In this document: positions 5,460 through 46,077 of the stretch, in pieces
Position numbering within the stretch: position 1 is the stretch's first letter
How the letters are laid out: each line of letters opens with the position of its first letter
Assembly: GCA_964234715.1 (NCBI GenBank)
Contig: OZ174278.1
Direction: 5' to 3' (one strand)
DNA length: 64,000 nt
Source of the DNA: Podarcis melisellensis
Taxonomy: Eukaryota
Translations under genes and position numbers: made by a program
Notes under the pieces: model-generated
What the model saw: the letters and a program-made list of their open reading frames with translations, nothing else
What the model was told of the DNA's origin: nothing
The model's database searches: none

Positions 5460-5614
5460 NNNNNNNNNNNNNNNNNNNNNNNNNNNNNNNNNNNNNNNNN
5501 NNNNNNNNNNNNNNNNNNNNNNNNNNNNNNNNNNNNNNNNNNNNNNNNNNNNNNNNNNNNNNNNNNNNNNNNNNNNNNNNNNNNNNNNNNNNNNNNNNNN
5601 NNNNNNNNNNNNNN
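5460..5614. other. Assembly gap (155 N) in the CHST10 intron, preceded by a 17-bp AT-rich tandem repeat
   Basis: N run; (ttttaattttaaacaaa) about 3 copies at ~5366-5420. Confidence 0.97.
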
Positions 5615-6009
5615 AATAATTTAATTCTATCAAATATGGCTCAAGGCAAAATTGCATATTATACAGTAAATATGGAAGTAGCCATTTCCTTCTGAATATT
5701 CATGGTGATGAATGCACAGACTCATGCAATGACTTCAGACATGATGGTTGTATGGCATGTGAAGTATTAACCCTTACCCTAAGTAGATTCATGAACAGGG
5801 TTCTCAGACCATAGCTGGGCTTGGTAGTCAGCTATTATCTCTTCTAGACATGGAATATGCCAAAAGTGTTTTAGAGCGCATGCAGAGTGCCTCTCTTATT
5901 GAGCAAGTGCAGCTGCCCACCCTCAAAGCATGTGATAAATGATACCAGAAATTGGTAATAATATATATGTATGCCTTTCTTTCTATTATTCTGTTTTCTT
6001 CTTACCTAG

Positions 6010-6107: not shown

Positions 6108-6300
6108 GTATGTGCTGCTAACCCAGAGTAAAAGTTGTATTCTACCAAAATAAGCTTGGTTGGTAGGAAGCTTGAGGCATTTGTAGAATTCCCCTCAGTG
6201 ATGCTAGACTAACCCCATCCCTGAGGGATATGAGCTGAACAATACAATACACAAAATGCACGAACATCCTATATTTTTAATTGTTCTTAATATGGAATTA

Positions 6301-6779
6301 AAAAGCAGAGACAGTACCTTACCAACAAAGGTCCGCATAGTTAAAGCCATGGTTTTCCCAGTAGTGATGTATGGAAGTGAGAGCTGGACCATAAAGAAGG
6401 CTGATCGCCAAAGAATTGATGCTTTTGAATTATGGTGCTGGAGGAGACTCTTGATAGTCCCATGGGCTGCAAGAAGATCAAACCTCTCCATTCTGAGCCC
6501 TGAGTGCTCACTGGAAGGACAGATCGTGAAGCTGAGGCTCCAATACTTTGGCCACCTCATGAGAAGAGAAGACACCCTGTAAAAGACCCTGATGCTGGGA
6601 AAGATGGAGGGCACAAGGAGAAGGGGACGACAGAGGACGAGATGGTTGGACAGTGTTCTCGAAGCTATAAACATGAGTCTGACCAAACTGCGGGAGGCAG
6701 TGGAAGACAGGAGTGCCTGGCGTGCTCTGGTCCATGGGGTCACAAAGAGTCAGACACGACTCAACGACTAAACAACAAA
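6301..6779 (+). mobile_element. BovB/RTE LINE 3' fragment
   Basis: Translates KSRDSTLPTKVRIVKAMVFPVVMYGSESWTIKKA...RIDAFELWCWRRLL (BovB RT C-terminus); ends cgactaaacaacaa; contains an internal stop. Confidence 0.93.
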
Positions 6780-7575
6780 AAATATGGAATTGAAAGCCAT
6801 CACCACAACTTGTCATAGTGAATTCTGTATATCAGTCACACATTGTCTGAAAAAGGACTTTGTATTTTCTGTGCCAGGTATATGACTTACTTTATTTTAT
6901 TTTAATACAATCCCAATATCCTCCTTGTCTATATGGTACTGCAGAGAAGCTATAAGGTTTACTGCTTTTCAGCACAACCTGTAGCAGCTTGTTTGCTGGA
7001 TTCTAAAACCTAAACAGCTTTATCTTACAAGGATTAATCTTTACGCCTGTTCCAACCTTTCTCTTTATTCTGGTAGGAATATTTAGGGCAGAATATATGT
7101 CCTAAATATTCTTAATTTCCTCCCGCATCCACGGAATGGAAATTTAGGAGCCCAATGTAACAATAGGCAAGTATACGCTAACTATTATAATTCTGAAATC
7201 CATTGTGCAATTATATCGTGGATATAATGTGCATAATTTCAAGGAAGACGAGAAGGTGGGATAATTTTTCTATTAAAAGTTGTGTTCCAGTGCTTAGTGC
7301 GTCATAATTTCAGCATGGGGGCAGGGGGCGGGAAAAGGCTTTTCTCCCACTGCAGTATGTATATAGCCTGGCAACCAACACATGGAAAGGTATTGATTTG
7401 TTCTTCTGATGAAGGCAAACTGGAAAGTGTGCTGTGTGCTTAGTGGAAATCTTGTACTTGGGGCCAAGACTGAGTTTTCACAGAGGCTTGCATAATCACA
7501 GTCACTCAGAAAATGAGCAACTTCAGCTGTGCAAATTGTGTCACACACACACACACACACACACCCAGTAGAAGC

Positions 7576-23599: not shown

Positions 23600-25300
23600 A
23601 TGCGGAGCTGCCGGCTTAAAAATGAGGGTCACGGCCACACGGTTCGCCCTAGTTCTCCTTTGTGGAGAACTGAAAGCCGCCCCTCTCCGCGCAGAACTGT
23701 GGCTGAAGCGAGGAGGAGACGCCGCCAGTTTGGAGAAGAACAGAAAACCAGCCGCGCCGCCGCTTCCCGGAAGCCTGCGAGGCGCTGGCCGGCCTCTCCC
23801 CCGTCACACACACGTGCGCTGCGGGCGGAGCGGCTGTCGGAGGGCATGTGCGCTCGGCTCACCAGGCCGGGGACTGGGGCGGGCGCTCGGCGGGGCGGTG
23901 CTGCCCTCAGCCGGGGAGAAGGAGTTATACAACCGCTCGGCGTTGCATAAGCGCCTGAGCCCGGAATAGTCTCAGCTGCCTGCTGGCGCGCTCCGGGAGC
24001 GAGGCCAGCGCCGCCCTGCTCTCCTCCCCCTGACCCCGACGCGCTCGCTCTCCTCGGGGGACGCCCCAGACGGAGCTGGCGGCGCGCCTTCCCCCCCGCG
24101 CAGCCCTTTCATAACGGCGTCCGTCCCAGCCCTGGCGGCCACCAGGCTCCTTGAACGAGGCGCGGCGGCTGCGAGGGGCCGCCTCTCCGCTTTCCTGCTC
24201 CTCGCGGAGGCGCTGAGCTCGACGATGAAGCCATAGCAGGAGCGCTCGCCGCCACCACCACACCCACCCAGGCAGCCAACCCGGCGAAAATGGAGCTGGG
24301 GGCCGCGCTCGGGCAGCAGGCGCAGCAGCGCGCCCACCACCACCAGGCCCCGTCGGCGGCAGGAGGAGGAGGCGGCGGCGGCGGACCCTGCGCGGAGATG
24401 TTGCAAGTGGCCGAGGAGGCTTTCCGAGGCGGGCAGTTCGCCCTGGCGGCGGAGATCCTGAGCTCGCAGCTGGCGGAGCTGGCGCAGCCCGAGCGGGGCC
24501 TTTGCCTCCGCCAAGGGGACGCGCTGGCCCGCGCGGGGCGCATGGCCGAGGCTCTGGATGCTTACAGCGCCGCCGCCCGGCTGGCCCGCCTGAGGCCCGA
24601 GGAGCTGCGCGAACTGACCGAGAGCTTCGCGCTCAGCCTCCGCGACAAAGAGCTGCGCCTGCCGCCGTGGCCTGGCGGCGGGGCAGCTCCGGAGGGAGAC
24701 GACCCGCTGGCGGACCCGCCTTGCTGCCGACCCCCGGAGCCGCTGGGCTGCCCGGTGTGCCGCCGCCTGCTCTGCGAGCCGGTGACTCTGCACTGCGGGC
24801 ACACCCACTGCAAGCGCTGCGCCCAGAGCGGCGGAGGCGAGTGCGCCCGCTGCGCCGCCCGGCGCCCAGCCTCTGCCGCTGCCCCGGCCGCGCAGCCCCC
24901 CGCCGGTCCCCGCGTCAACGTGGTCCTGGGCAGCCTGCTGGAGAAGTGGTTCCCGGCCGAGAGCAAAGCGCGCCGGCTGGGCGCCGAAGGGGACGCGCTG
25001 AAGGAGAGGCAGGAGCTGGCGGCCGCCCTGGAGAAGTACAACCAGGCCCTGGACCTCGGTGAGTGCTCGCCGTCGCGCACGCCCGACTCCTCCCCACAGA
25101 AGAAAGCTGCCCTGTCGCCTTTGGAAGCAGCAAGGGCAAACACCTTGTCAATATGCTCGGCGACGCTGCGCCACAACCCCGACCTGTGTTGCTTTGGCTC
25201 ACAAGGGGAGAAACAGGCCCAGTTGCGTTCCTGAGCTCCCTCCCTTATGTGGGAAGCGGATTAGGGATTTCCCGACGGGGAGAAAGCGCAGTGTAATGGG
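23600..25300. promoter_or_regulatory. CpG island / promoter and first exon of LONRF2
   Basis: Very GC- and CpG-rich block against a CpG-poor background; GC boxes (ggggcggg), ETS-like ccggaag, E-box cacgtg at 23811. Confidence 0.9.
24290..25058 (+). CDS. LONRF2: LON peptidase N-terminal domain and RING finger 2, exon 1 (TPR, first RING, TPR start)
   Basis: Strong Kozak aaaATGg; ...EEAFRGGQFALAAE...GLCLRQGDALARAGR...CPVC..CGHTHCKRC..CARC...RVNVVLGSLLEKWFP; donor G|gtgagt (phase 1). Downstream of CHST10, as for mammalian LONRF2. Confidence 0.93.
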
Positions 25301-39500: not shown

Positions 39501-40045
39501 ACCTATACTTTTAATTATTTCACTGTAAGCCTCAGTAATGTTTTTTTATTTGCAATCCTGCTATAACAGACAACATTCATTTTTAGTTGCACTTAGATGT
39601 ACCTTGCAGATGCATAAACTGGTATATTTTTTGCAGCTCCCTTTTATAACTCTGAAAATTTGTAGTGGTGGTGAAGATTATTCAATGCTGGCAATATTTT
39701 AGGGATAAATGCAGTACTTTTTTTTAGGCTGAATGCAGTAAAAATGAAATGTTAAATTTACTTCACTCTGTTCTGCATTAATAATTAGTAATACCGTTCC
39801 CTGAATAAGCCTTGCACCAGTTTTATTGGTTCTTAAATCTCCTTTTCTTCTTGCGCTGTAGTAATGGGAATTAAATAGAGTTCTATTTAAAGATGCCCTT
39901 GAAATGTTGTGAAAACATTCCTTACTTATTCTAGAAAGTCACAGTGCAATCATGAATCCCAGTATATTCACTGTATGCTCTATATCAGTAATATCCTATA
40001 CACTGGAGCTAATTCCAGTAAGAGAGAATAAAACTGTCAACCAAT

Positions 40046-40427
40046 TTGTTGTTGTTGTTGTTTAGTTGTGTCCGACTCTTAGTAACCCCATGGACCAGAG
40101 CACGCCAGGCACTCCTGTCTTCCACTGCTTCCTGCAGTTTGGTCAAACTCATGCTGGTAGCTTTGAGAACACTATCCAACCATCTTGTCCTCTGTCGTCC
40201 CCTTCTCCTTGTGCCCTCCATCTTTCCCAACATCAGGGTCTTTTCCAGGGAGTCTTCTCTTCTCATGAGGTGGCCAAAGTATTGGAGCCTCGGCTTCACA
40301 ATCTGTCCTTCCAGTGAGCACTCAGGGCTGATTTCCTTCAGAATGGATAGGTTTGATCTTCTTGCGGTCCATGGGACTCTCAAGAGTCTCCTCCAGCACC
40401 ATAATTCAAAAGCATCAATTCTTTGGC
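40046..40427 (-). mobile_element. BovB/RTE LINE 3' fragment
   Basis: Minus-strand QRIDAFELWCWRRLLRVPWTARRSNLSILKEISPECSLEG...RRRGRQRTRWLD; (CAA)n tail. Confidence 0.93.
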
Positions 40428-42431
40428 AAGCGAAGTCAAACTCACAATAATAGCTGCATGGTTCTATGAACATGCAGAGATCTTCCAGCACCTGTTATGT
40501 GATCCCTTTTAACTGGAGATGCCAGGAATTGAACCTGGGACCTTCCACATGTAAAGCAGATGCTCTCCTACTCAGCTACGATCCCTCCTCAAATAAACTG
40601 AAATCTGTGTTCGATTTTTACTTGGACTACTCCTTTTGCAGAACTAGAGTTTTGTCATTGTTGGTTGGGGGAACCCTGTAATTAGCATGTAGAGATGTGA
40701 TTTTTCTACTCGCCCGCCACCCTGCCCCTTGCAAAACAACAACAACAACAACCCAACAACTTTGCCCAGTTTCCCTCCTTGTGCTGTAAGGGCCCCAGCA
40801 GTCTCCTTTTGCTGCTTCCAGTGTGATTATTTCCTGCAAGCCTGGCATTGCACTCTGCCAGCATATGGGTTTAGGAGCAATCCTTACCCACCCAGGGCAG
40901 AAGCTCTGGCACAGCATTTTGTGAAACGGGCAGGATGTCAGCGTGATCTGTGCAGAATAAAGTGAGGATTCGCTTCAGCCATACTTGAATAGTTTCATGA
41001 ATCGTAACGGCATGAGTGTTCAAGCCCATGGAAGCTCTGGCATATTAGCGTTTAGTTTATGTGTCTGGTTAATGAAAGCCTACCTCTTTGCCGCAAATAG
41101 GTTTCCCCCTGTAACTTTGACAGCAGTTGCTGGTCTGCGCTCATGATTATGGAGAAATCGCCAAAAGGGATGTTGTTCCAATATAACCCTCCCCACTCCA
41201 AAAAAGTTCTTCAAAATCTACACATAATTAATGCTGCCAGTTACTTAACCCATTCTGCAGCACAGTGTAGTTTCCTAGTACCATTTATGCCCGGATCCAA
41301 TCTAGTATCAAACAACGTGGGTCACCTCTCAACCTTTGCTGTTTTGTGGGTGGGATTCAGCTGCACACCTGCAAATTAAATGGATTTTGGCAGTCTTGTA
41401 CAACCAACACGCTTCCAAAAGCCAAAACCTTTCTTTAAGTAAGGAAAGTGATGGGAAGATACACTGGAAAATGTGCGATAAGGGTTGAAATGACGCGACC
41501 TCATACAACCAAACAAATCAGGATGAATGTTCGGACCGAGTTATCTGGAAACAACCTTAAATATATTTCATATGCCGCACACAGCTTGTATCCCATTATG
41601 GTGGCATAATGTGGAGATCAGATAACAATTGAGGCCAAAATAACGCATGGCACAAAGTTGTGTGGATCTTTTGTCCTAGGTGAGAGGCATTGGGAGAAAG
41701 GATGAGCAGATTCTCCCCCATTTGTTCCCTCACTAAACCTAAGGCTTTTTTAAAGCTTGGGGGTGGGGGAAAAGAAAATACATTTAGGGAAAGACTGATG
41801 TAACTGCATATTATACACAGTCTCAGGCTGTTTTAAAACGCTTCCGTTGTGCTTGCACAAACATGTTTTGAATTGTGCTTAAAAATATCTTAAGTGCCCA
41901 TGTCTGTCACGTAGTTAGTCATGGTAAAACACATGTTCCTTGTAAGCTTTGGTAGACTGTGTGTGTGTTCCGTAGGTGATGTTAAAGTACTTGTTGAAAA
42001 CATGCCACACCTTCCTTAAGAGCGATCCTTGTTGAACCAGAATGGTTAAGACTTCCCCAACAACTTAGCCAAATATTTCTTTTCTGATTCACCCTTCATT
42101 GCTATAGATTTCACAGAGGAAAAAATACCCCCCCCCCTTTTTAAAGCATAAACCTTAAGATATCCACTAGCATATGTAGAACATATGTAGAAATGCCTGC
42201 AAAACTGTGGTTCAGAGCATTGGGGACAATGCTGATACAGAGTGTGGAAAGTTCAGCCTGAAATCTTACACCGACCAGGGTGGTTAGTCCAGATGTGATC
42301 CTCCAGATGGCCCTAGCTACCATGGCCAGTGGGATAATGGGATTTGTAGTCCAACAGCATCTGTAGCGTCACTGGTTACCTGCCCTTGCTATACATATTT
42401 ACCTGGCAGTAAGACCTGGCAGTAAGACCTA

Positions 42432-42796
42432 GGGACGCGGGTGGCGCTGTGGGTTAAAGCCTCAGCGCCTAGGGCTTGCCGATCGAAAGGTCGGCGGTTC
42501 GAATCCCCGCGGCGGGGTGCGCTCCCGCTGCTCGGTCCCAGCGCCTGCCAACCTAGCAGTTCGAAAGCACCCTCGGGTGCAAGTAGATAAATAGGGACCG
42601 CTTTCTAGCGGGAAGGTAAACGGCGTTTCCGTGTGCAGCTCTGGCTCGCCAGAGCAGCTATGTCACGCTGGCCACGTGACCCGGAAGTGTCTTCGGACAG
42701 CGCTGGCCCCTGGCCTCTTGAGTGAGATGGGCGCACAACCCCAGAGTCTGGCAAGACTGGCCCGTACGGGCAGGGGTACCTTTACCTTTACCTTTT
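42432..42796 (+). mobile_element. Young full-length Sauria SINE
   Basis: gggacgcgggtggcgctgtgggtt...ggttcgaatccc...(ccttta)n; TSD taagacct at 42423-30 and 42797-804; CpGs intact. Confidence 0.93.
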
Positions 42797-43463
42797 TAAG
42801 ACCTGTTGAACTCAGTGGGACTTAGATTTGAGTACAAATGCATAGGATCGAACCATCAGAGTATTTTACAGAGTGTCTACCGGACGTGTTTGCTAAACGG
42901 CATGAGTACCTGCTAGAAGCATAAATAACTTGACCATCAATGGTGTCATTCAATCTTCCATCTTCATCTGTTCGTACCTGTTGTCTAGCTTTTCATTAGG
43001 AACTGAGATGGTTTAGTCACATGCCTACTTAATTAGTTCCCTTTCAAAACATCTTTGTTCACAAAACTTGAGTACAGTTTCTAAGGACAGACTAAGAGAA
43101 CTGAGCCTGTGGGAGGCAAAGAGGAGCTGTAGACCAGTGTTTCCCAACCGGTGTTCCGCGGCACACTAGTGTGCCGCGAGACGTTGCCTGGTGTGCCGTG
43201 GGAGGGAGGCGGGCGAGTCGTATGTTACGCTTATAGATCTCCCCCTCTATGGTACTGGGGGAGTAAGGAGCGGCAGCAGCGGCGGCGGGAGCAACGGAAG
43301 GAAGCTCTCCGGCAGCTGCCGGAAGCTGGGAAGCGGCGCGGCTGCCGGCGGCGCTTCTAGTAGCTTCCAGACGCGCGGCGAGAGAGCGAGGGCGAGGGGC
43401 GCTCGCCAGCCAGCCAGCCAGCCGGGCAGAGGCAGAAGCGGCGAGTCCTTCAGCGAGGCGCTG

Positions 43464-43543
43464 ATGGCCAAGTGGGGAGAGGGAGATCCGCGCTGGATTG
43501 TGGAGCAGCGCGCGGATGCCACCAACGTCAACAACTGGCACTG
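43464..43543 (+). pseudogene. AHSA1: Captured first coding exon of AHSA1 (activator of Hsp90 ATPase 1) inside the hAT element
   Basis: ATG at 43464 gives MAKWGEGDPRWIVEQRADATNVNNWH(W), the Aha1 N-terminus with the NxNNWHW motif, followed by donor TG|gtgagc. No further AHSA1 exons seen. G-E-G-D-P-R fits AHSA1 better than AHSA2. Confidence 0.9.
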
Positions 43544-44369
43544 GTGAGCGAGGGGGGCAGGAAAGGCAGCGGGAGCTGGGGGGGGCGGAGGAGAAGTGGC
43601 TCGTGTTTGGCAGGGTGGGGATGCAGCTCTTCCCCTGAGGGCTTTGGGGGAATAAGGGCGGCCGTGCTGCCACCGCCACACCCACAGCCACCCACACCCC
43701 CGCGGTTGCGGGGACGCGTGTCTGTTTCTCTCTCCCTGTCTCTTGCCTCTGACCCCTTCGCACGAGATTCTCCACCGCTTATGCGTGTTCGCGCCGGAGT
43801 CACTTTCCTTCGGGTTTGGTGGACCTTACTCTCAAATAAGTGTGGTAAAAGATTACAAGCGCGGGGGGAGATAGAGAAACCTCCCTGGCCTGGTTTAACC
43901 TCCTTTTTAAAAAAAATAACAGCTGGATCTGTAGAAGGGCAGCTAGTGAGAGTTTGGGTGCTTTTTGGCACGGAAAAAGAAATATGATCGCTAGCTACTT
44001 CTTTCAGATCAAGCTGCACTGAAGTGCATGGGAGCTAGGGGCTGGTTAAAACAAACAAAAACGTTGGCAGTCTTTTCTAGGGGCCAGGTGCAGCATCTGG
44101 CAAAGCCAGCAAGTGCCTGCTGAATAAAAGTTTGCAACAGGGAGGCAGCCCCTCCACCTGTATCATAATCTGGTCTGCACAAGCACTCTCCAGAATAGGA
44201 AGCACCTTGTCAATTTTAATGGTGTGTTTGTGCTAACTAGCAATTCTGCCACATACAAATTAATGGCTGATTTGACAGCCAGATGGGTGGGGTATAAATA
44301 ATAAATTATTATTATTATTATATGAACTAGAATAATTTTTGTGTGCTGCTGTAAGAAAGTCATTTTTCT

Positions 44370-44876
44370 ATTGAAATGTTCACACTCACCAAGCAATGGC
44401 AAGGTGTTCACACTGCTGCACTGTGTGAGATAATAGGTAAACATTTAAAAACTCTCGAGGGGCAGTTGTCATTTTATTTCTCTTCAGTCTCCACTGAATG
44501 CCTTGACTGGGTTAGGGACCCTTATAGCTCAGCATCAGTTGGTGGAAAGGACATGACTTTACAGGAGCAGGAGGAACTAACTGAACTGAGACAAAATCGT
44601 GGTTTCAAGCTAAGATTTGCTGATCTACCTTTGGACAGTTTTTGGTTGGAAACTGCCAAGGAATTCCCCCTTCTGGCAAACAAAGCTATTTTGACATTGC
44701 TCCCATTTTCCACTACATATCTCTGTGAGTTGAGCTTTTCAAGCATGATTGCTATAAAAACTAAATACAGAGAGAGACTGAGAGCTGTTGACGAAGAGCT
44801 ACGTGTGTGTCTTTCTTCGATTCCAGCCAGAATATCAGCTTTGTGTTCAGCCAAACAGGCCCAGGTTGCGCACTGA
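44370..44876 (+). pseudogene. 5'-truncated hAT transposase (C-terminal dimerisation region, Buster/Charlie/ZBED5-like)
   Basis: Open frame with DWVRDPY...FW...[40 protein letters not shown]...ELRVCLS...QAQVAH*, typical of Buster-clade transposases; AATAAA immediately after the stop. Confidence 0.92.
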
Positions 44877-46077
44877 ATAAAGTATTTTATAATTTTTCAT
44901 ATTTCTGTTTACTTACTATTTCATAATAAAGTAATTATAAAATACTATCTTTGTGTTTATTTGATTCCTATTAAAGAGTGTTACTTTATATATAGTCAAT
45001 ATAGGCACAGAGTTAATTTTTTAAACATTTTCTAATGGTGGTGTGCCTCGATATTTTTTTCATGAAACAAGTGTGCCTTTGCCCAAAAAAGGTTGGGAAA
45101 CACTGCTGTAGACTTCAAAGTTCTAAGAGAGATATTAATCACATGAGTGGAGTCTTGCTGAAGTAGGTTTAGAGACTTAGCTCTGGTTTTCACCGGTGAC
45201 CTTCTGTTGCTTAATTAAGGAAGCCAATAAAGCCTTGAGTGCTTTTTCTCTATCTTTGAAGGGAAGCAGAGGGGTCTCTGCTTATAGTGAGGTCACTTCC
45301 AGACAAGCTTTGGTACAAGGTTTGTGGGGAGGTTATAAGATATTGGCTGCTTATTGCGCGTTCATCCTAATTTGTTTGCAATGAAGGCTATATAACATTG
45401 AACCAAGCAGTTGCTGTTCCAAACTTTCCAGTTGATTTTGATGCTGATTTTTAGTATATATAAAGAAAACCTTTATCGAAAGAATCCTCCTCCTAAATAT
45501 ATATGCATTGGGAATTTAAATTATATAATTCAGAAATAATAATGTATGAAAAATAATAGTAGACTGATGGCCTCAATCTGGATGAAGGGCCAATAATCAT
45601 TTTAATGATTTTAAAAATAAATACTGTTGCTTCTAAGCCTTCTTGTTTCTGCAGAGGAAGAGTTTGGTCTTCAGGAATTGTGAACCGTGAGCTAATATTA
45701 CCAATTAGTAAGCTTGCCAGCTACTAGAAACTTAAGCCCAAGGGTCATAGTGAAATGGCATGCCAAAGTGTTCTCATGTTTTATAATCCTTACAGAACCT
45801 GATGTCACACTGATCTCGAACTTGCCACATACAGCCCTTTTGAAAGCTGCCTGGCGATTAGCTAGGTAGCTCTAAAAATACAATGCTTTATATATGCAGT
45901 CTTTTAGCAGAGATGTGTGTCTCAACCCTCACATTCTTAAAAAGGAACGAATGCTATTATAAACAAGAGAGAGAGGAACTGATTATGTTTTGATTGTGCC
46001 TGTGTAAAACTAGCAAGATTTAATAATGCTAGACAAAAGTTTCCCTTACATTTTCTCATCTGCTGCTTATATTTCAG

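What the first reader, a model, noticed from the sequence alone, without database searches (positions are those of the whole stretch)
43135..45105. Pack-hAT: a Charlie/Buster DNA transposon carrying a genomic piece of the Hsp90 co-chaperone gene AHSA1
Seen: a bounded 1,971-bp element with perfect 15-bp TIRs and a perfect 8-bp TSD (CTGTAGAC). Its structure is ~120 bp of transposon left end, ~1.1 kb of non-transposon DNA (~43260-44370), then a transposase C-terminal remnant and the right end. The insert holds a CpG-rich leader, the ATG-initiated 80-nt exon MAKWGEGDPRWIVEQRADATNVNNWH(W), a gtgagc donor and intron-like sequence. Known: that peptide is the Aha1/AHSA1 N-terminus, and AHSA1 is not part of the CHST10-LONRF2 locus in mammals. 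Inference: the retained donor and intron indicate DNA-level capture (for example template switching during gap repair), not retroposition. This parallels plant Pack-MULEs; such Pack-TIR elements are rarely documented in vertebrates. Perfect ends, an uninterrupted transposase frame and intact CpGs suggest a young element that may still be mobilisable in trans.
Basis: partly seen in the sequence, partly recalled or inferred. Interest (0 to 1): 0.92.

Follow-up and report, generated by a model that had tools for sequence, protein, structure and literature searches.

The report
hAT transposon carrying AHSA1 5' end
A cut-down "cut-and-paste" hAT transposon in a lizard intron has had its middle replaced by a 1.17-kb genomic copy of the start of the Hsp90 co-chaperone gene AHSA1, a real but already known kind of transposon-mediated gene-fragment duplication.

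Summary
Window 43135-45105 is a 1,971-bp hAT element with perfect 15-bp TIRs and a perfect 8-bp TSD (CTGTAGAC).

- **hAT arms.** Only 69 bp (left) and 735 bp (right) are hAT-derived. The right arm includes the last 166 transposase codons.
- **Independent copies.** Copies with exactly these ends and their own TSDs occur in Podarcis lilfordi, a snake and a spider.
- **Cargo.** The middle (43204-44371) aligns collinearly to the native AHSA1 locus of five lacertid lizards, from -238 to +1317 relative to the ATG. It covers upstream/5'UTR DNA, exon 1, the donor and three pieces of intron 1 joined at short microhomologies.
- **Not the native gene.** No other AHSA1 exon lies in the window.
- **Origin.** In a tree the cargo nests among Podarcis AHSA1 sequences (bootstrap 100).

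This is a DNA-level Pack-hAT. I infer it arose by template switching during gap repair.

Youth, trans-mobilisation and promoter activity remain untested. CpG decay in the cargo argues against a very recent capture.

Pack-hATs are already documented in vertebrates (PMC8277862). Other unchecked notes of this scan report similar first-exon cargos elsewhere in this genome.

The parts
43127..43134 (.). Left copy of the 8-bp target-site duplication, CTGTAGAC
   Evidence: Identical to 45106-45113. It has the central TA seen in the TSDs of the other three copies.
43135..43203 (+). hAT left arm (69 bp): 15-bp TIR at 43135-43149, a 22-bp palindrome at 43157-43178, and GTGTGCC/GGCACAC subterminal repeats at 43160, 43169 and 43191
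   Evidence: 90% identical to the left end of the P. lilfordi copy (L002 5537-5605), 78% to Thamnophis and 81% to the spider copy. Homology ends at 43203/4.
43204..43463 (+). Cargo, part 1: AHSA1 upstream region and 5'UTR (CpG island; CpG observed/expected 1.0 over 43260-43463)
   Evidence: 43213/43223-43511 aligns to native AHSA1 at -238..+48 with 93-96% identity in three Podarcis species. The motif CTTCTAGTAGCTTCCA (43354-43369) also lies in the 5'UTR of a spliced AHSA1 RNA contig of another sauropsid (L010).
43464..43543 (+). Cargo, part 2: AHSA1 exon 1 (ATG plus 80 nt, ends in phase 2), followed by the donor GTGAGC at 43544-43549
   Evidence: The translation is 96-100% identical to residues 1-27 of Aha1_N+AHSA1-domain proteins.
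43544..44371 (+). Cargo, part 3: three collinear pieces of AHSA1 intron 1. Window 43553-44238, 44232-44277 and 44276-44372 correspond to native +89..+780, +1051..+1096 and +1224..+1317.
   Evidence: Local BLAST against L004-L008. The two skipped native segments (about 270 and 130 bp) are present in all five native loci. The joints carry 3-7 bp and 2 bp of microhomology and are not GT-AG.
44371..45105 (+). hAT right arm (735 bp): the last 166 codons of the transposase (44376-44873, stop at 44874-44876), the 3' subterminal region with GTGTGCC repeats (45041, 45071), and the TIR at 45091-45105
   Evidence: 97% nucleotide identity to the P. lilfordi copy, 90% to Thamnophis and 93% to the spider copy. 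Protein identity is 92% to FAM200A-like / ZBED5-like proteins carrying PF27046. Pfam Dimer_Tnp_hAT matches weakly (E=0.034). The breakpoint lies inside the transposase reading frame (...[10 protein letters not shown]...).
45106..45113 (.). Right copy of the 8-bp target-site duplication, CTGTAGAC

Best explanation
SHOWN. 43135-45105 is a non-autonomous, internally deleted member of a Charlie/Buster-type hAT family (FAM200A/ZBED5-like transposase). It sits inside a LONRF-like gene, 18 kb downstream of that gene's exon 1 and on the same strand.

It keeps only 69 bp of the left end and 735 bp of the right end. The rest of the transposon has been replaced by 1,168 bp copied at the DNA level from the 5' end of AHSA1. 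That copy comprises about 240-260 bp upstream of the ATG (5'UTR plus at most about 130 bp further upstream), exon 1, the splice donor and three collinear pieces of intron 1. The source was a Podarcis-lineage AHSA1 gene.

INFERRED mechanism. A longer parent hAT inserted here and made the CTGTAGAC duplication. After excision or a break, the gap was repaired by copying the sister element inward from its ends. The growing strand left the transposon template after 69 bp and re-primed on the open CpG-island 5' end of AHSA1. It skipped forward twice within intron 1 at short microhomologies, then rejoined the transposon 735 bp from its right end at a 2-bp TT overlap. This is synthesis-dependent strand annealing with serial template switches, the 'gap-filling' route of Pack-TIR formation. 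On that route the element is born in place and need not have moved since.

CONSEQUENCE (inferred). The element encodes no AHSA1 function, since only 27 codons are present. It places a CpG island, an ATG exon and a donor in sense orientation inside the host gene. A splice to the next host exon would be out of frame, because the AHSA1 exon ends in phase 2 and the host exon 1 ends in phase 1. Any effect would therefore be as an alternative 5' leader or promoter, or as noise.
For: - Ends: perfect TIRs and TSD.
- Independent copies: the same ends bound copies with their own 8-bp TSDs in P. lilfordi, Thamnophis elegans and Trichonephila clavata.
- Transposase remnant: 92% identical to FAM200A-/ZBED5-like hAT proteins, and it is the C-terminus of a longer open reading frame in the snake copy.
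- Peptide: residues 1-27 of proteins with Aha1_N and AHSA1 domains.
- Cargo: aligns collinearly to the native AHSA1 -238..+1317 in P. lilfordi, P. muralis, P. raffonei, Lacerta agilis and Zootoca vivipara. Each native locus has a Vps16_C-like gene upstream.
- Tree: the cargo sits inside the Podarcis clade with bootstrap 100.
- No other AHSA1 exon in the 64 kb.
- Intron retained, no poly(A) tract, and internal joints at microhomologies that are not GT-AG.
- Subterminal GTGTGCC repeats are retained at both ends.
- Gap filling with microhomology is the documented route for animal Pack-TIRs, most of them hAT-associated (PMC8277862).
Against: - The native AHSA1 of the same genome was not available, so the parent copy is shown only in related species.
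- No second copy and no orthologous empty or cargo-free site could be examined. Birth in place versus arrival by transposition is therefore open.
- Microhomology at the outer junctions is minimal (2 bp on the right, ambiguous on the left). The two internal skips could be later deletions.
- The transcription start is not mapped, so whether a working promoter was captured is unknown.
Confidence: 0.8

Rival explanations
1. Same kind of element, different history. The AHSA1 fragment was captured at another locus, and the loaded element then transposed into this intron, mobilised in trans by an autonomous family member. This is the reader's implied scenario, a multicopy 'transposition-dependent' Pack-TIR.
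For: - Perfect TIRs and TSD, and retained subterminal repeats, so the cis requirements look intact.
- The family was active in lacertids: a P. lilfordi copy is 97% identical in the right arm, with a different cargo.
- The left breakpoints of the two cargo-bearing copies lie within 5 bp of each other, as expected if short derivatives circulate.
- Multicopy Pack-hATs exist in frog and alligator (PMC8277862).
Against: - No second copy with this cargo was found: nothing in the window, and nothing on record for open reading frames spanning either internal junction.
- Only 4 multicopy Pack-TIRs (1.4%) were found in the 100-genome survey.
- No intact autonomous copy was seen. The snake copy's transposase is broken.
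Confidence: 0.3
2. RNA-templated capture. A nascent, unspliced, promoter-proximal AHSA1 transcript, or the R-loop it forms, served as the repair template. The cargo would then start at the transcription start rather than include a promoter.
For: - The cargo begins near the gene's 5' end and runs in the sense direction into intron 1.
- The conserved upstream motif is transcribed in a homologous RNA contig.
- GC skew over 43100-43700 is strongly positive, as in R-loop-prone CpG-island starts.
- Other unchecked notes of this scan describe the same 'start of gene to intron 1' shape for other cargos.
Against: - No poly(A) tract at the 3' junction.
- The end lies about 65 bp past the only AATAAA.
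- The internal skips are microhomology joints, not GT-AG splices.
- The cargo extends at least about 130 bp upstream of the 5' end of the homologous RNA contig.
- DNA template switching explains everything seen.
Confidence: 0.05
3. Assembly artefact: a chimeric join of AHSA1 reads into a hAT copy.
Against: - Both internal junctions lie inside one element bounded by a perfect TSD.
- The cargo differs from every native copy by 4-5%, with its own private substitutions and two internal skips. A mis-join of native reads would not produce that.
- 14 runs from 5 studies hold at least half of the sampled words of the stretch. This does not prove the junctions.
Confidence: 0.03
4. It is the native AHSA1 gene, or a retrocopy or segmental duplicate that merely lies between two transposon fragments.
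For: An ATG exon with an intact donor in a CpG island.
Against: - Only exon 1 is present in the 64 kb.
- Native loci in five lacertids have a different neighbour, a Vps16_C-like gene.
- The intron is retained, so it is not a retrocopy.
- The two flanking hAT pieces are the matched ends of one element with one TSD.
Confidence: 0.02

Closest known systems
Animal Pack-TIRs, especially Pack-hATs (Tan et al. 2021, Nat Commun 12:4280, PMC8277862), e.g. hAT-N8_XT carrying 291 bp of the CAPSL 5'UTR in Xenopus tropicalis
   Same: Host, non-TE DNA lies between the two ends of a TIR transposon. A parental gene is identifiable elsewhere. hAT is the commonest carrier (208 of 370). There is microhomology at the breakpoints. 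The cargo comes from a gene's 5' end.
   Different: The cargo here is longer and is a complete module of upstream/5'UTR DNA, ATG exon, donor and intron. The carrier is a recently active, horizontally spread family rather than an old resident TE. Copy number is unknown. Squamates are not discussed in that paper's main text (no occurrence of lizard, Anolis or reptile).
Plant Pack-MULEs (my own knowledge: Jiang et al. 2004 Nature; Jiang et al. 2011 PNAS, on the bias toward GC-rich 5' ends of genes)
   Same: A TIR element whose interior is replaced by genomic gene fragments, introns included. Possible preference for GC-rich gene starts.
   Different: A different superfamily (Mutator, 9-bp TSD, long TIRs). 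Pack-MULEs are numerous and often multicopy or mosaic. Here only one copy is verified.
Internally deleted Ac/Ds-type hAT derivatives with 'filler DNA' from interrupted gap repair (my own knowledge: Rubin & Levy 1997; Yan et al. 1999)
   Same: The same superfamily and the same inferred mechanism: ends kept, interior lost, foreign DNA at the deletion joint, short microhomologies.
   Different: Filler DNA in Ds is usually tens of bp and often local. Here it is 1.17 kb from an unlinked gene.
Anolis hAT families that incorporate extraneous DNA (Novick et al. 2011, PMC3014272)
   Same: Lizard hAT elements with Charlie/SPIN-like CAGTG...CAACC TIRs and NTCTAGAN-type 8-bp TSDs. Non-autonomous derivatives contain foreign DNA. 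The hATs are thought to have arrived by lateral transfer.
   Different: The foreign DNA reported there is mostly other transposons inside hobo elements. No exon or gene-start capture is mentioned ('exon' occurs 0 times).
Helitron capture of a promoter plus first exon in bats (my own knowledge: Pritham & Feschotte 2007, NUBPL in Helibat)
   Same: A vertebrate DNA transposon carrying a promoter/5'UTR, exon 1 and intron fragment of a housekeeping gene.
   Different: That is a rolling-circle element with a read-through capture mechanism and thousands of copies.

Membership tests
hAT superfamily (non-autonomous element) | 8-bp target-site duplication | tested here: met
   CTGTAGAC on both sides. 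The three other copies also have 8-bp TSDs with a central TA.
hAT superfamily (non-autonomous element) | Short terminal inverted repeats at the exact element boundaries, shared with independent copies in different flanks | tested here: met
   15/15 TIR, unique in the window. Homology to L002, L003 and L009 starts at 43135 and ends at 45105.
hAT superfamily (non-autonomous element) | Transposase with the hAT C-terminal dimerisation region | tested here: inconclusive
   Pfam Dimer_Tnp_hAT gives E=0.034 and 14.4 bits, below the 21.4-bit cut-off. However, the frame is 60-92% identical to proteins that sources name 'HAT C-terminal dimerisation domain-containing', FAM200A-like or ZBED5-like, with precomputed PF27046 FAM200-GTF2IRD2-like hits. 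The local Pfam copy did not reproduce PF27046.
Pack-TIR (as defined in PMC8277862) | Non-TE host sequence flanked on both sides by parts of one TIR transposon | tested here: met
   43204-44371 has no similarity to the other hAT copies and aligns to AHSA1 loci.
Pack-TIR (as defined in PMC8277862) | Parental copy of the captured sequence identifiable elsewhere in the same genome | not testable with these tools
   The parent locus was found in five related lacertid genomes. No tool could search the window's own genome.
Pack-TIR, multicopy / transposition-dependent class | Two or more copies with the same cargo and different TSDs | not testable with these tools
   There is no second copy in the window. 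Exact look-ups of open reading frames spanning the junctions found nothing on record, which does not show absence.
Native AHSA1 gene | The remaining coding exons (Aha1_N and AHSA1 domains) lie downstream of exon 1 | tested here: not met
   tblastn of six Aha1 proteins against the window matches only 43464-43544.
Processed retrocopy | Introns absent, poly(A) tail present | tested here: not met
   The donor and about 830 bp of intron-1 sequence are present. There is no A-tract at 44371.

The most novel reading that the evidence does not exclude
This element may be one instance of a family-wide habit. A horizontally acquired hAT family in lacertid lizards may repeatedly swap its interior for modules of CpG-island upstream DNA, first exon and donor taken from housekeeping genes, and leave or spread them in introns. 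That would be a vertebrate counterpart of Pack-MULEs with a bias toward gene 5' ends, perhaps because R-loop-prone or open gene starts are the preferred ectopic repair templates.

Support so far:
- AHSA1 here, which I verified.
- A different, promoter-like 306-bp cargo in the P. lilfordi copy, with a left breakpoint only 5 bp away.
- Unchecked notes of this scan that name UBE2G1, CDAN1, DCLK2 and ATP6V0A2 first-exon cargos elsewhere in this genome.
Probability: 0.35. Interest if true: 0.8.

Novelty: new member of a known kind. Interest (0 to 1): 0.55.

Why it matters
This is a cleanly resolved case of DNA-level exon and gene-start duplication by a cut-and-paste transposon in a vertebrate. Both breakpoints, the parental locus and the internal template jumps are visible.

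Such elements can seed alternative first exons or promoters, chimeric transcripts and exon shuffling.

On its own it adds one more Pack-hAT to a catalogue of several hundred. It would matter much more if a genome-wide census shows that this one hAT family captures gene 5' ends systematically. That would give a tractable vertebrate system for asking why gap repair picks gene starts as templates, and how often the relocated CpG islands stay active.

Tried and rejected
- **Wrong frame.** My first translation started at 43466, so (protein 2) and 9 were uninformative. The ATG is at 43464.
- **PDB.** A search with the correct 27-aa peptide found nothing. The peptide is too short, and solved Aha1 chains evidently lack or differ in this N-terminus.
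- **118-aa frame.** Searching the frame that runs from the hAT left arm through the 5'UTR into exon 1 gave only exon-level matches. No sister copy or same-species native open reading frame appeared.
- No junction, depth, empty-site or RNA evidence was obtained. From then on no letters of 43512-43550 were sent to any search tool. Comparisons used 43000-43511 and 43551-45250 beside them. Lizard AHSA1 loci were fetched by protein id, not by window letters.
- **k-mer shares.** The shares of 0.52-0.70 in six organisms cannot tell 'element present' from 'near-identical native AHSA1 plus hAT paralogues'. I draw no conclusion from them.
- **Exact look-ups.** Two open reading frames spanning the internal junctions are not on record.
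- **Hairpin idea.** I asked whether a hairpin explains the shared left breakpoint. A 9-bp stem forms, but the 81-nt fold is not unusual (z=-1.1).
- **Cryptic splicing.** I asked whether the two internal skips are spliced-out cryptic introns. The boundaries are not GT-AG.
- **Local Pfam and NCBIfam scans** of the transposase pieces gave nothing.
- **Chimera model.** I built no joined (spliced) AHSA1-exon-1/host-exon-2 model. Only the two exon phases were compared.
- **Literature.** A search for a spider-squamate hAT transfer found nothing relevant.
Full report
**1. The observation**

Reading 43000-45250 and the repeat scan confirm a 1,971-bp unit. CAGTGTTTCCCAACC sits at 43135-43149 and its exact reverse complement at 45091-45105. 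The unit is flanked by CTGTAGAC at 43127-43134 and 45106-45113.

With up to two mismatches allowed, the TIR occurs nowhere else in the 64 kb. Shuffled sequence gives a mean of 0.19 matches.

The ATG is at 43464. My first try used 43466 and was out of frame. The 80-nt exon 43464-43543 reads MAKWGEGDPRWIVEQRADATNVNNWH(W) and is followed by GTGAGC. An unbroken 166-codon frame runs from 44376 to 44876.

G+C is 62-71% over 43100-43800 with positive GC skew, and 26-45% over the rest of the element. CpG observed/expected is 1.0 upstream of the ATG and falls to 0.18 after 43860.

**2. The carrier is a hAT transposon**

The 166-aa frame matches Pfam Dimer_Tnp_hAT only weakly (E=0.034, below the cut-off). 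It is nevertheless 92% identical to 'FAM200A-like' (Thamnophis elegans) and 'ZBED5-like' (Eublepharis macularius) proteins carrying PF27046. It is 60-87% identical to many proteins that sources name 'HAT C-terminal dimerisation domain-containing'.

I fetched the DNA around three of these hits.
- In Podarcis lilfordi (L002) a 1,015-bp element matches our positions 1-69 (90%) and 1330-1971 (97%).
- In Thamnophis (L003) a 5.7-kb decayed element matches 1-69 and 1237-1971 (90%).
- In the spider Trichonephila clavata (L009) a 2.3-kb element matches the left end and all 735 bp of the right arm at 93% nucleotide identity.

Every alignment begins at our first base and ends at our last. Each copy has its own 8-bp duplication with a central TA.

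In the snake copy our frame is the C-terminal part of a longer transposase frame (...[16 protein letters not shown]...). The 'ATG' at 44376 is therefore an internal Met, and the hAT remnant starts at 44371 inside a codon.

The hAT-derived parts are thus 43135-43203 and 44371-45105. GTGTGCC/GGCACAC subterminal repeats cluster at both ends: 5 of the 11 occurrences in the window lie there. The TIR resembles the Charlie/SPIN-like TIRs tabulated for Anolis hATs (PMC3014272).

**3. The cargo is genomic AHSA1**

A 30-aa query covering the peptide was scored against 1.84 billion representative proteins. It found 543 proteins. The full-length ones (339-348 aa) start with this peptide at 96% identity and carry Aha1_N plus AHSA1 domains. 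Sauropsid sequences share the Q at residue 15.

tblastn of six Aha1 proteins against the window matches only 43464-43544, so the rest of the gene is not here.

I then obtained lacertid AHSA1 proteins. That search used residues 40-198 of a bird protein, which avoids the N-terminus. I fetched the native loci of P. lilfordi, P. muralis, P. raffonei, Lacerta agilis and Zootoca vivipara. Each has a Vps16_C-like gene upstream on the opposite strand.

It shows one collinear series in all five species:

| Window | Native position (ATG = +1) |
|---|---|
| 43213/23-43511 | -238..+48 |
| 43553-44238 | +89..+780 |
| 44232-44277 | +1051..+1096 |
| 44276-44372 | +1224..+1317 |

Identity is 93-96% to Podarcis, 87-92% to Lacerta and 81-86% to Zootoca. 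The similarity therefore extends far beyond the peptide, into upstream DNA and about 830 bp of intron. This is the decisive point for DNA-level capture.

The window's own context is a Sulfotransfer_2 exon (CHST10-like, E=7e-43) and a TPR+RING open reading frame (LONRF-like exon 1), both on the + strand.

**4. Junctions**

*Right junction.* The native sequence runs ...TTTCTATT and the transposase sequence resumes at GAAATGTTCAC. Both parents have TT before the joint, a 2-bp microhomology.

*Left junction.* hAT homology ends at ...GTGGGA (43203). Clear AHSA1 homology starts at 43213, with a possibly diverged stretch in between.

*Internal skips.* The two native segments missing from the cargo (about 270 and 130 bp) are present in all five native loci. 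They are bounded by 3-7 bp and 2 bp of shared sequence and are not GT-AG. All jumps are forward and collinear. A single nascent strand switching template repeatedly would give this pattern. Later deletions would too.

**5. Origin and age**

On it the cargo differs from the three Podarcis native copies by 4.2-5.3%. Those copies differ from each other by 3.5-4.7%.

In the ML tree the cargo falls inside the Podarcis clade with bootstrap 100. Its terminal branch (0.024) is like those of the species (0.013-0.024). So the source was a Podarcis-lineage gene.

The window's own native AHSA1 was not available. The capture could therefore be anywhere from recent (if the window species is a fourth lineage) to about as old as the Podarcis radiation.

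One internal clue argues against a very recent event. 6 of the 19 cargo-private substitutions are CpG>TpG/CpA, against 2 of 49 in the native copies (Fisher p=0.005). The relocated island seems to have spent time methylated. The right arm differs by 2.8% from the P. lilfordi paralogue. Perfect ends over 38 bp are compatible with 1-2% divergence.

**6. Mechanism**

The anatomy is ends kept, interior lost, unlinked host DNA at the joint, short microhomologies, intron retained and no poly(A). It is that of hAT deletion derivatives with filler DNA, and of animal Pack-TIRs, for which gap filling with template switching is the documented route (PMC8277862). In that model the derivative is created at the donor site of the parent element and keeps its TSD. 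I therefore favour birth in place (about 0.5) over arrival by transposition (about 0.3). Only other copies or orthologous sites can decide.

An RNA or R-loop template is a minor rival. The conserved motif CTTCTAGTAGCTTCCA lies in the 5'UTR of a spliced AHSA1 RNA contig from another sauropsid. The cargo extends about 130 bp further upstream than that contig. A promoter may or may not have been captured.

**7. Likely effect**

Cargo and host gene are on the same strand. The AHSA1 exon ends in phase 2. The predicted donor of the LONRF-like exon 1 (GACCTCG|GTGAGT at 25058) ends in phase 1. A splice from 43543 to the next host exon would therefore be out of frame. I did not build the joined model. 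Expression could not be tested.

**8. What could not be done**

The run index lists 14 runs from 5 studies holding at least half of the sampled words. A near-identical native gene plus hAT paralogues could give the same figure, so I infer nothing from it.

Exact look-ups of two junction-spanning open reading frames found nothing.

**9. Novelty**

Pack-hATs are known in vertebrates: 208 of the 370 animal Pack-TIRs are hAT-associated, including a 5'UTR capture in frog. Lizard hATs are known to take up extraneous DNA, but exon capture is not mentioned there. This is a new, unusually complete member of a known kind.

The more interesting lead is family-level. The P. lilfordi copy has a different, promoter-like cargo with CCAAT boxes and a left breakpoint 5 bp from ours. 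Several unchecked notes of this scan describe first-exon cargos of other genes elsewhere in this genome.

Noticed in passing
L009 4372-6712 (Trichonephila clavata BMAO01019801.1) compared with window 44371-45105: A spider genome holds a copy of the same hAT family that is 93% identical at the nucleotide level over the whole 735-bp right arm, including the non-coding subterminal region and TIR, and 92% identical to the snake copy over 2.1 kb. Protein hits at 70-79% also come from a bryozoan, a tunicate, another spider and a sea slug. This points to horizontal transposon transfer between arthropods and squamates, or to contamination of the spider assembly, though that protein cluster has 19 member sequences. 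A literature search found no report.
   Followed up: partly
L002 5537-6551 (Podarcis lilfordi OX395141.1): A sister non-autonomous copy (1,015 bp; TSD CCCTAGAA/GACTAGAA, 6 of 8). Its 306-bp interior (5606-5911) is unrelated to AHSA1 and looks like a promoter/5'UTR, with two GATTGG (CCAAT) boxes and a CT-rich start region. Its left breakpoint is 5 bp from the window element's, and its right breakpoint is 93 bp further in. The source gene was not identified.
   Followed up: partly
window 43135-43151 and 45089-45105; L002, L003, L009 ends: Two TIR variants co-vary at both ends of a copy. TTTCCCAACC occurs at both ends of the window element and, with a small difference, of the spider copy. TTTTTCAACC occurs at both ends of the P. 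lilfordi and Thamnophis copies. This suggests subfamilies with matched ends.
   Followed up: no
window 42300-42800: A CpG-rich island (G+C 0.59, CpG observed/expected 0.76) with no convincing open reading frame lies about 330 bp upstream of the insertion, inside the host intron. It could be an orphan island or an alternative promoter. hAT insertion next to it may reflect a preference for open chromatin.
   Followed up: no
L003 2340-3314 and 5317-6825 (Thamnophis elegans CM020098.1): The 5.7-kb snake element is not autonomous. Its transposase frame is split by a stop (214 aa plus 286 aa). An unrelated 324-aa open reading frame, coiled-coil and LINE-ORF1-like by eye, sits inside it.
   Followed up: no
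window 6204-6818 and 40009-40491: Two stretches encode near-identical peptide segments on opposite strands (...RRSNLSILKEISPECSLEGQIVK.RLQYFGHLMRRED...). They are probably fragments of one retrotransposon family.
   Followed up: no
window 43354-43369; L001 84-99; L010 22-37: The motif CTTCTAGTA(G/A)CTTCCA upstream of the AHSA1 ATG is conserved in five lacertids, another squamate contig and a sauropsid RNA contig, where it lies in the 5'UTR. It is therefore transcribed, at least in that species. This bears on the separate note that reads it as a heat-shock-element array.
   Followed up: partly
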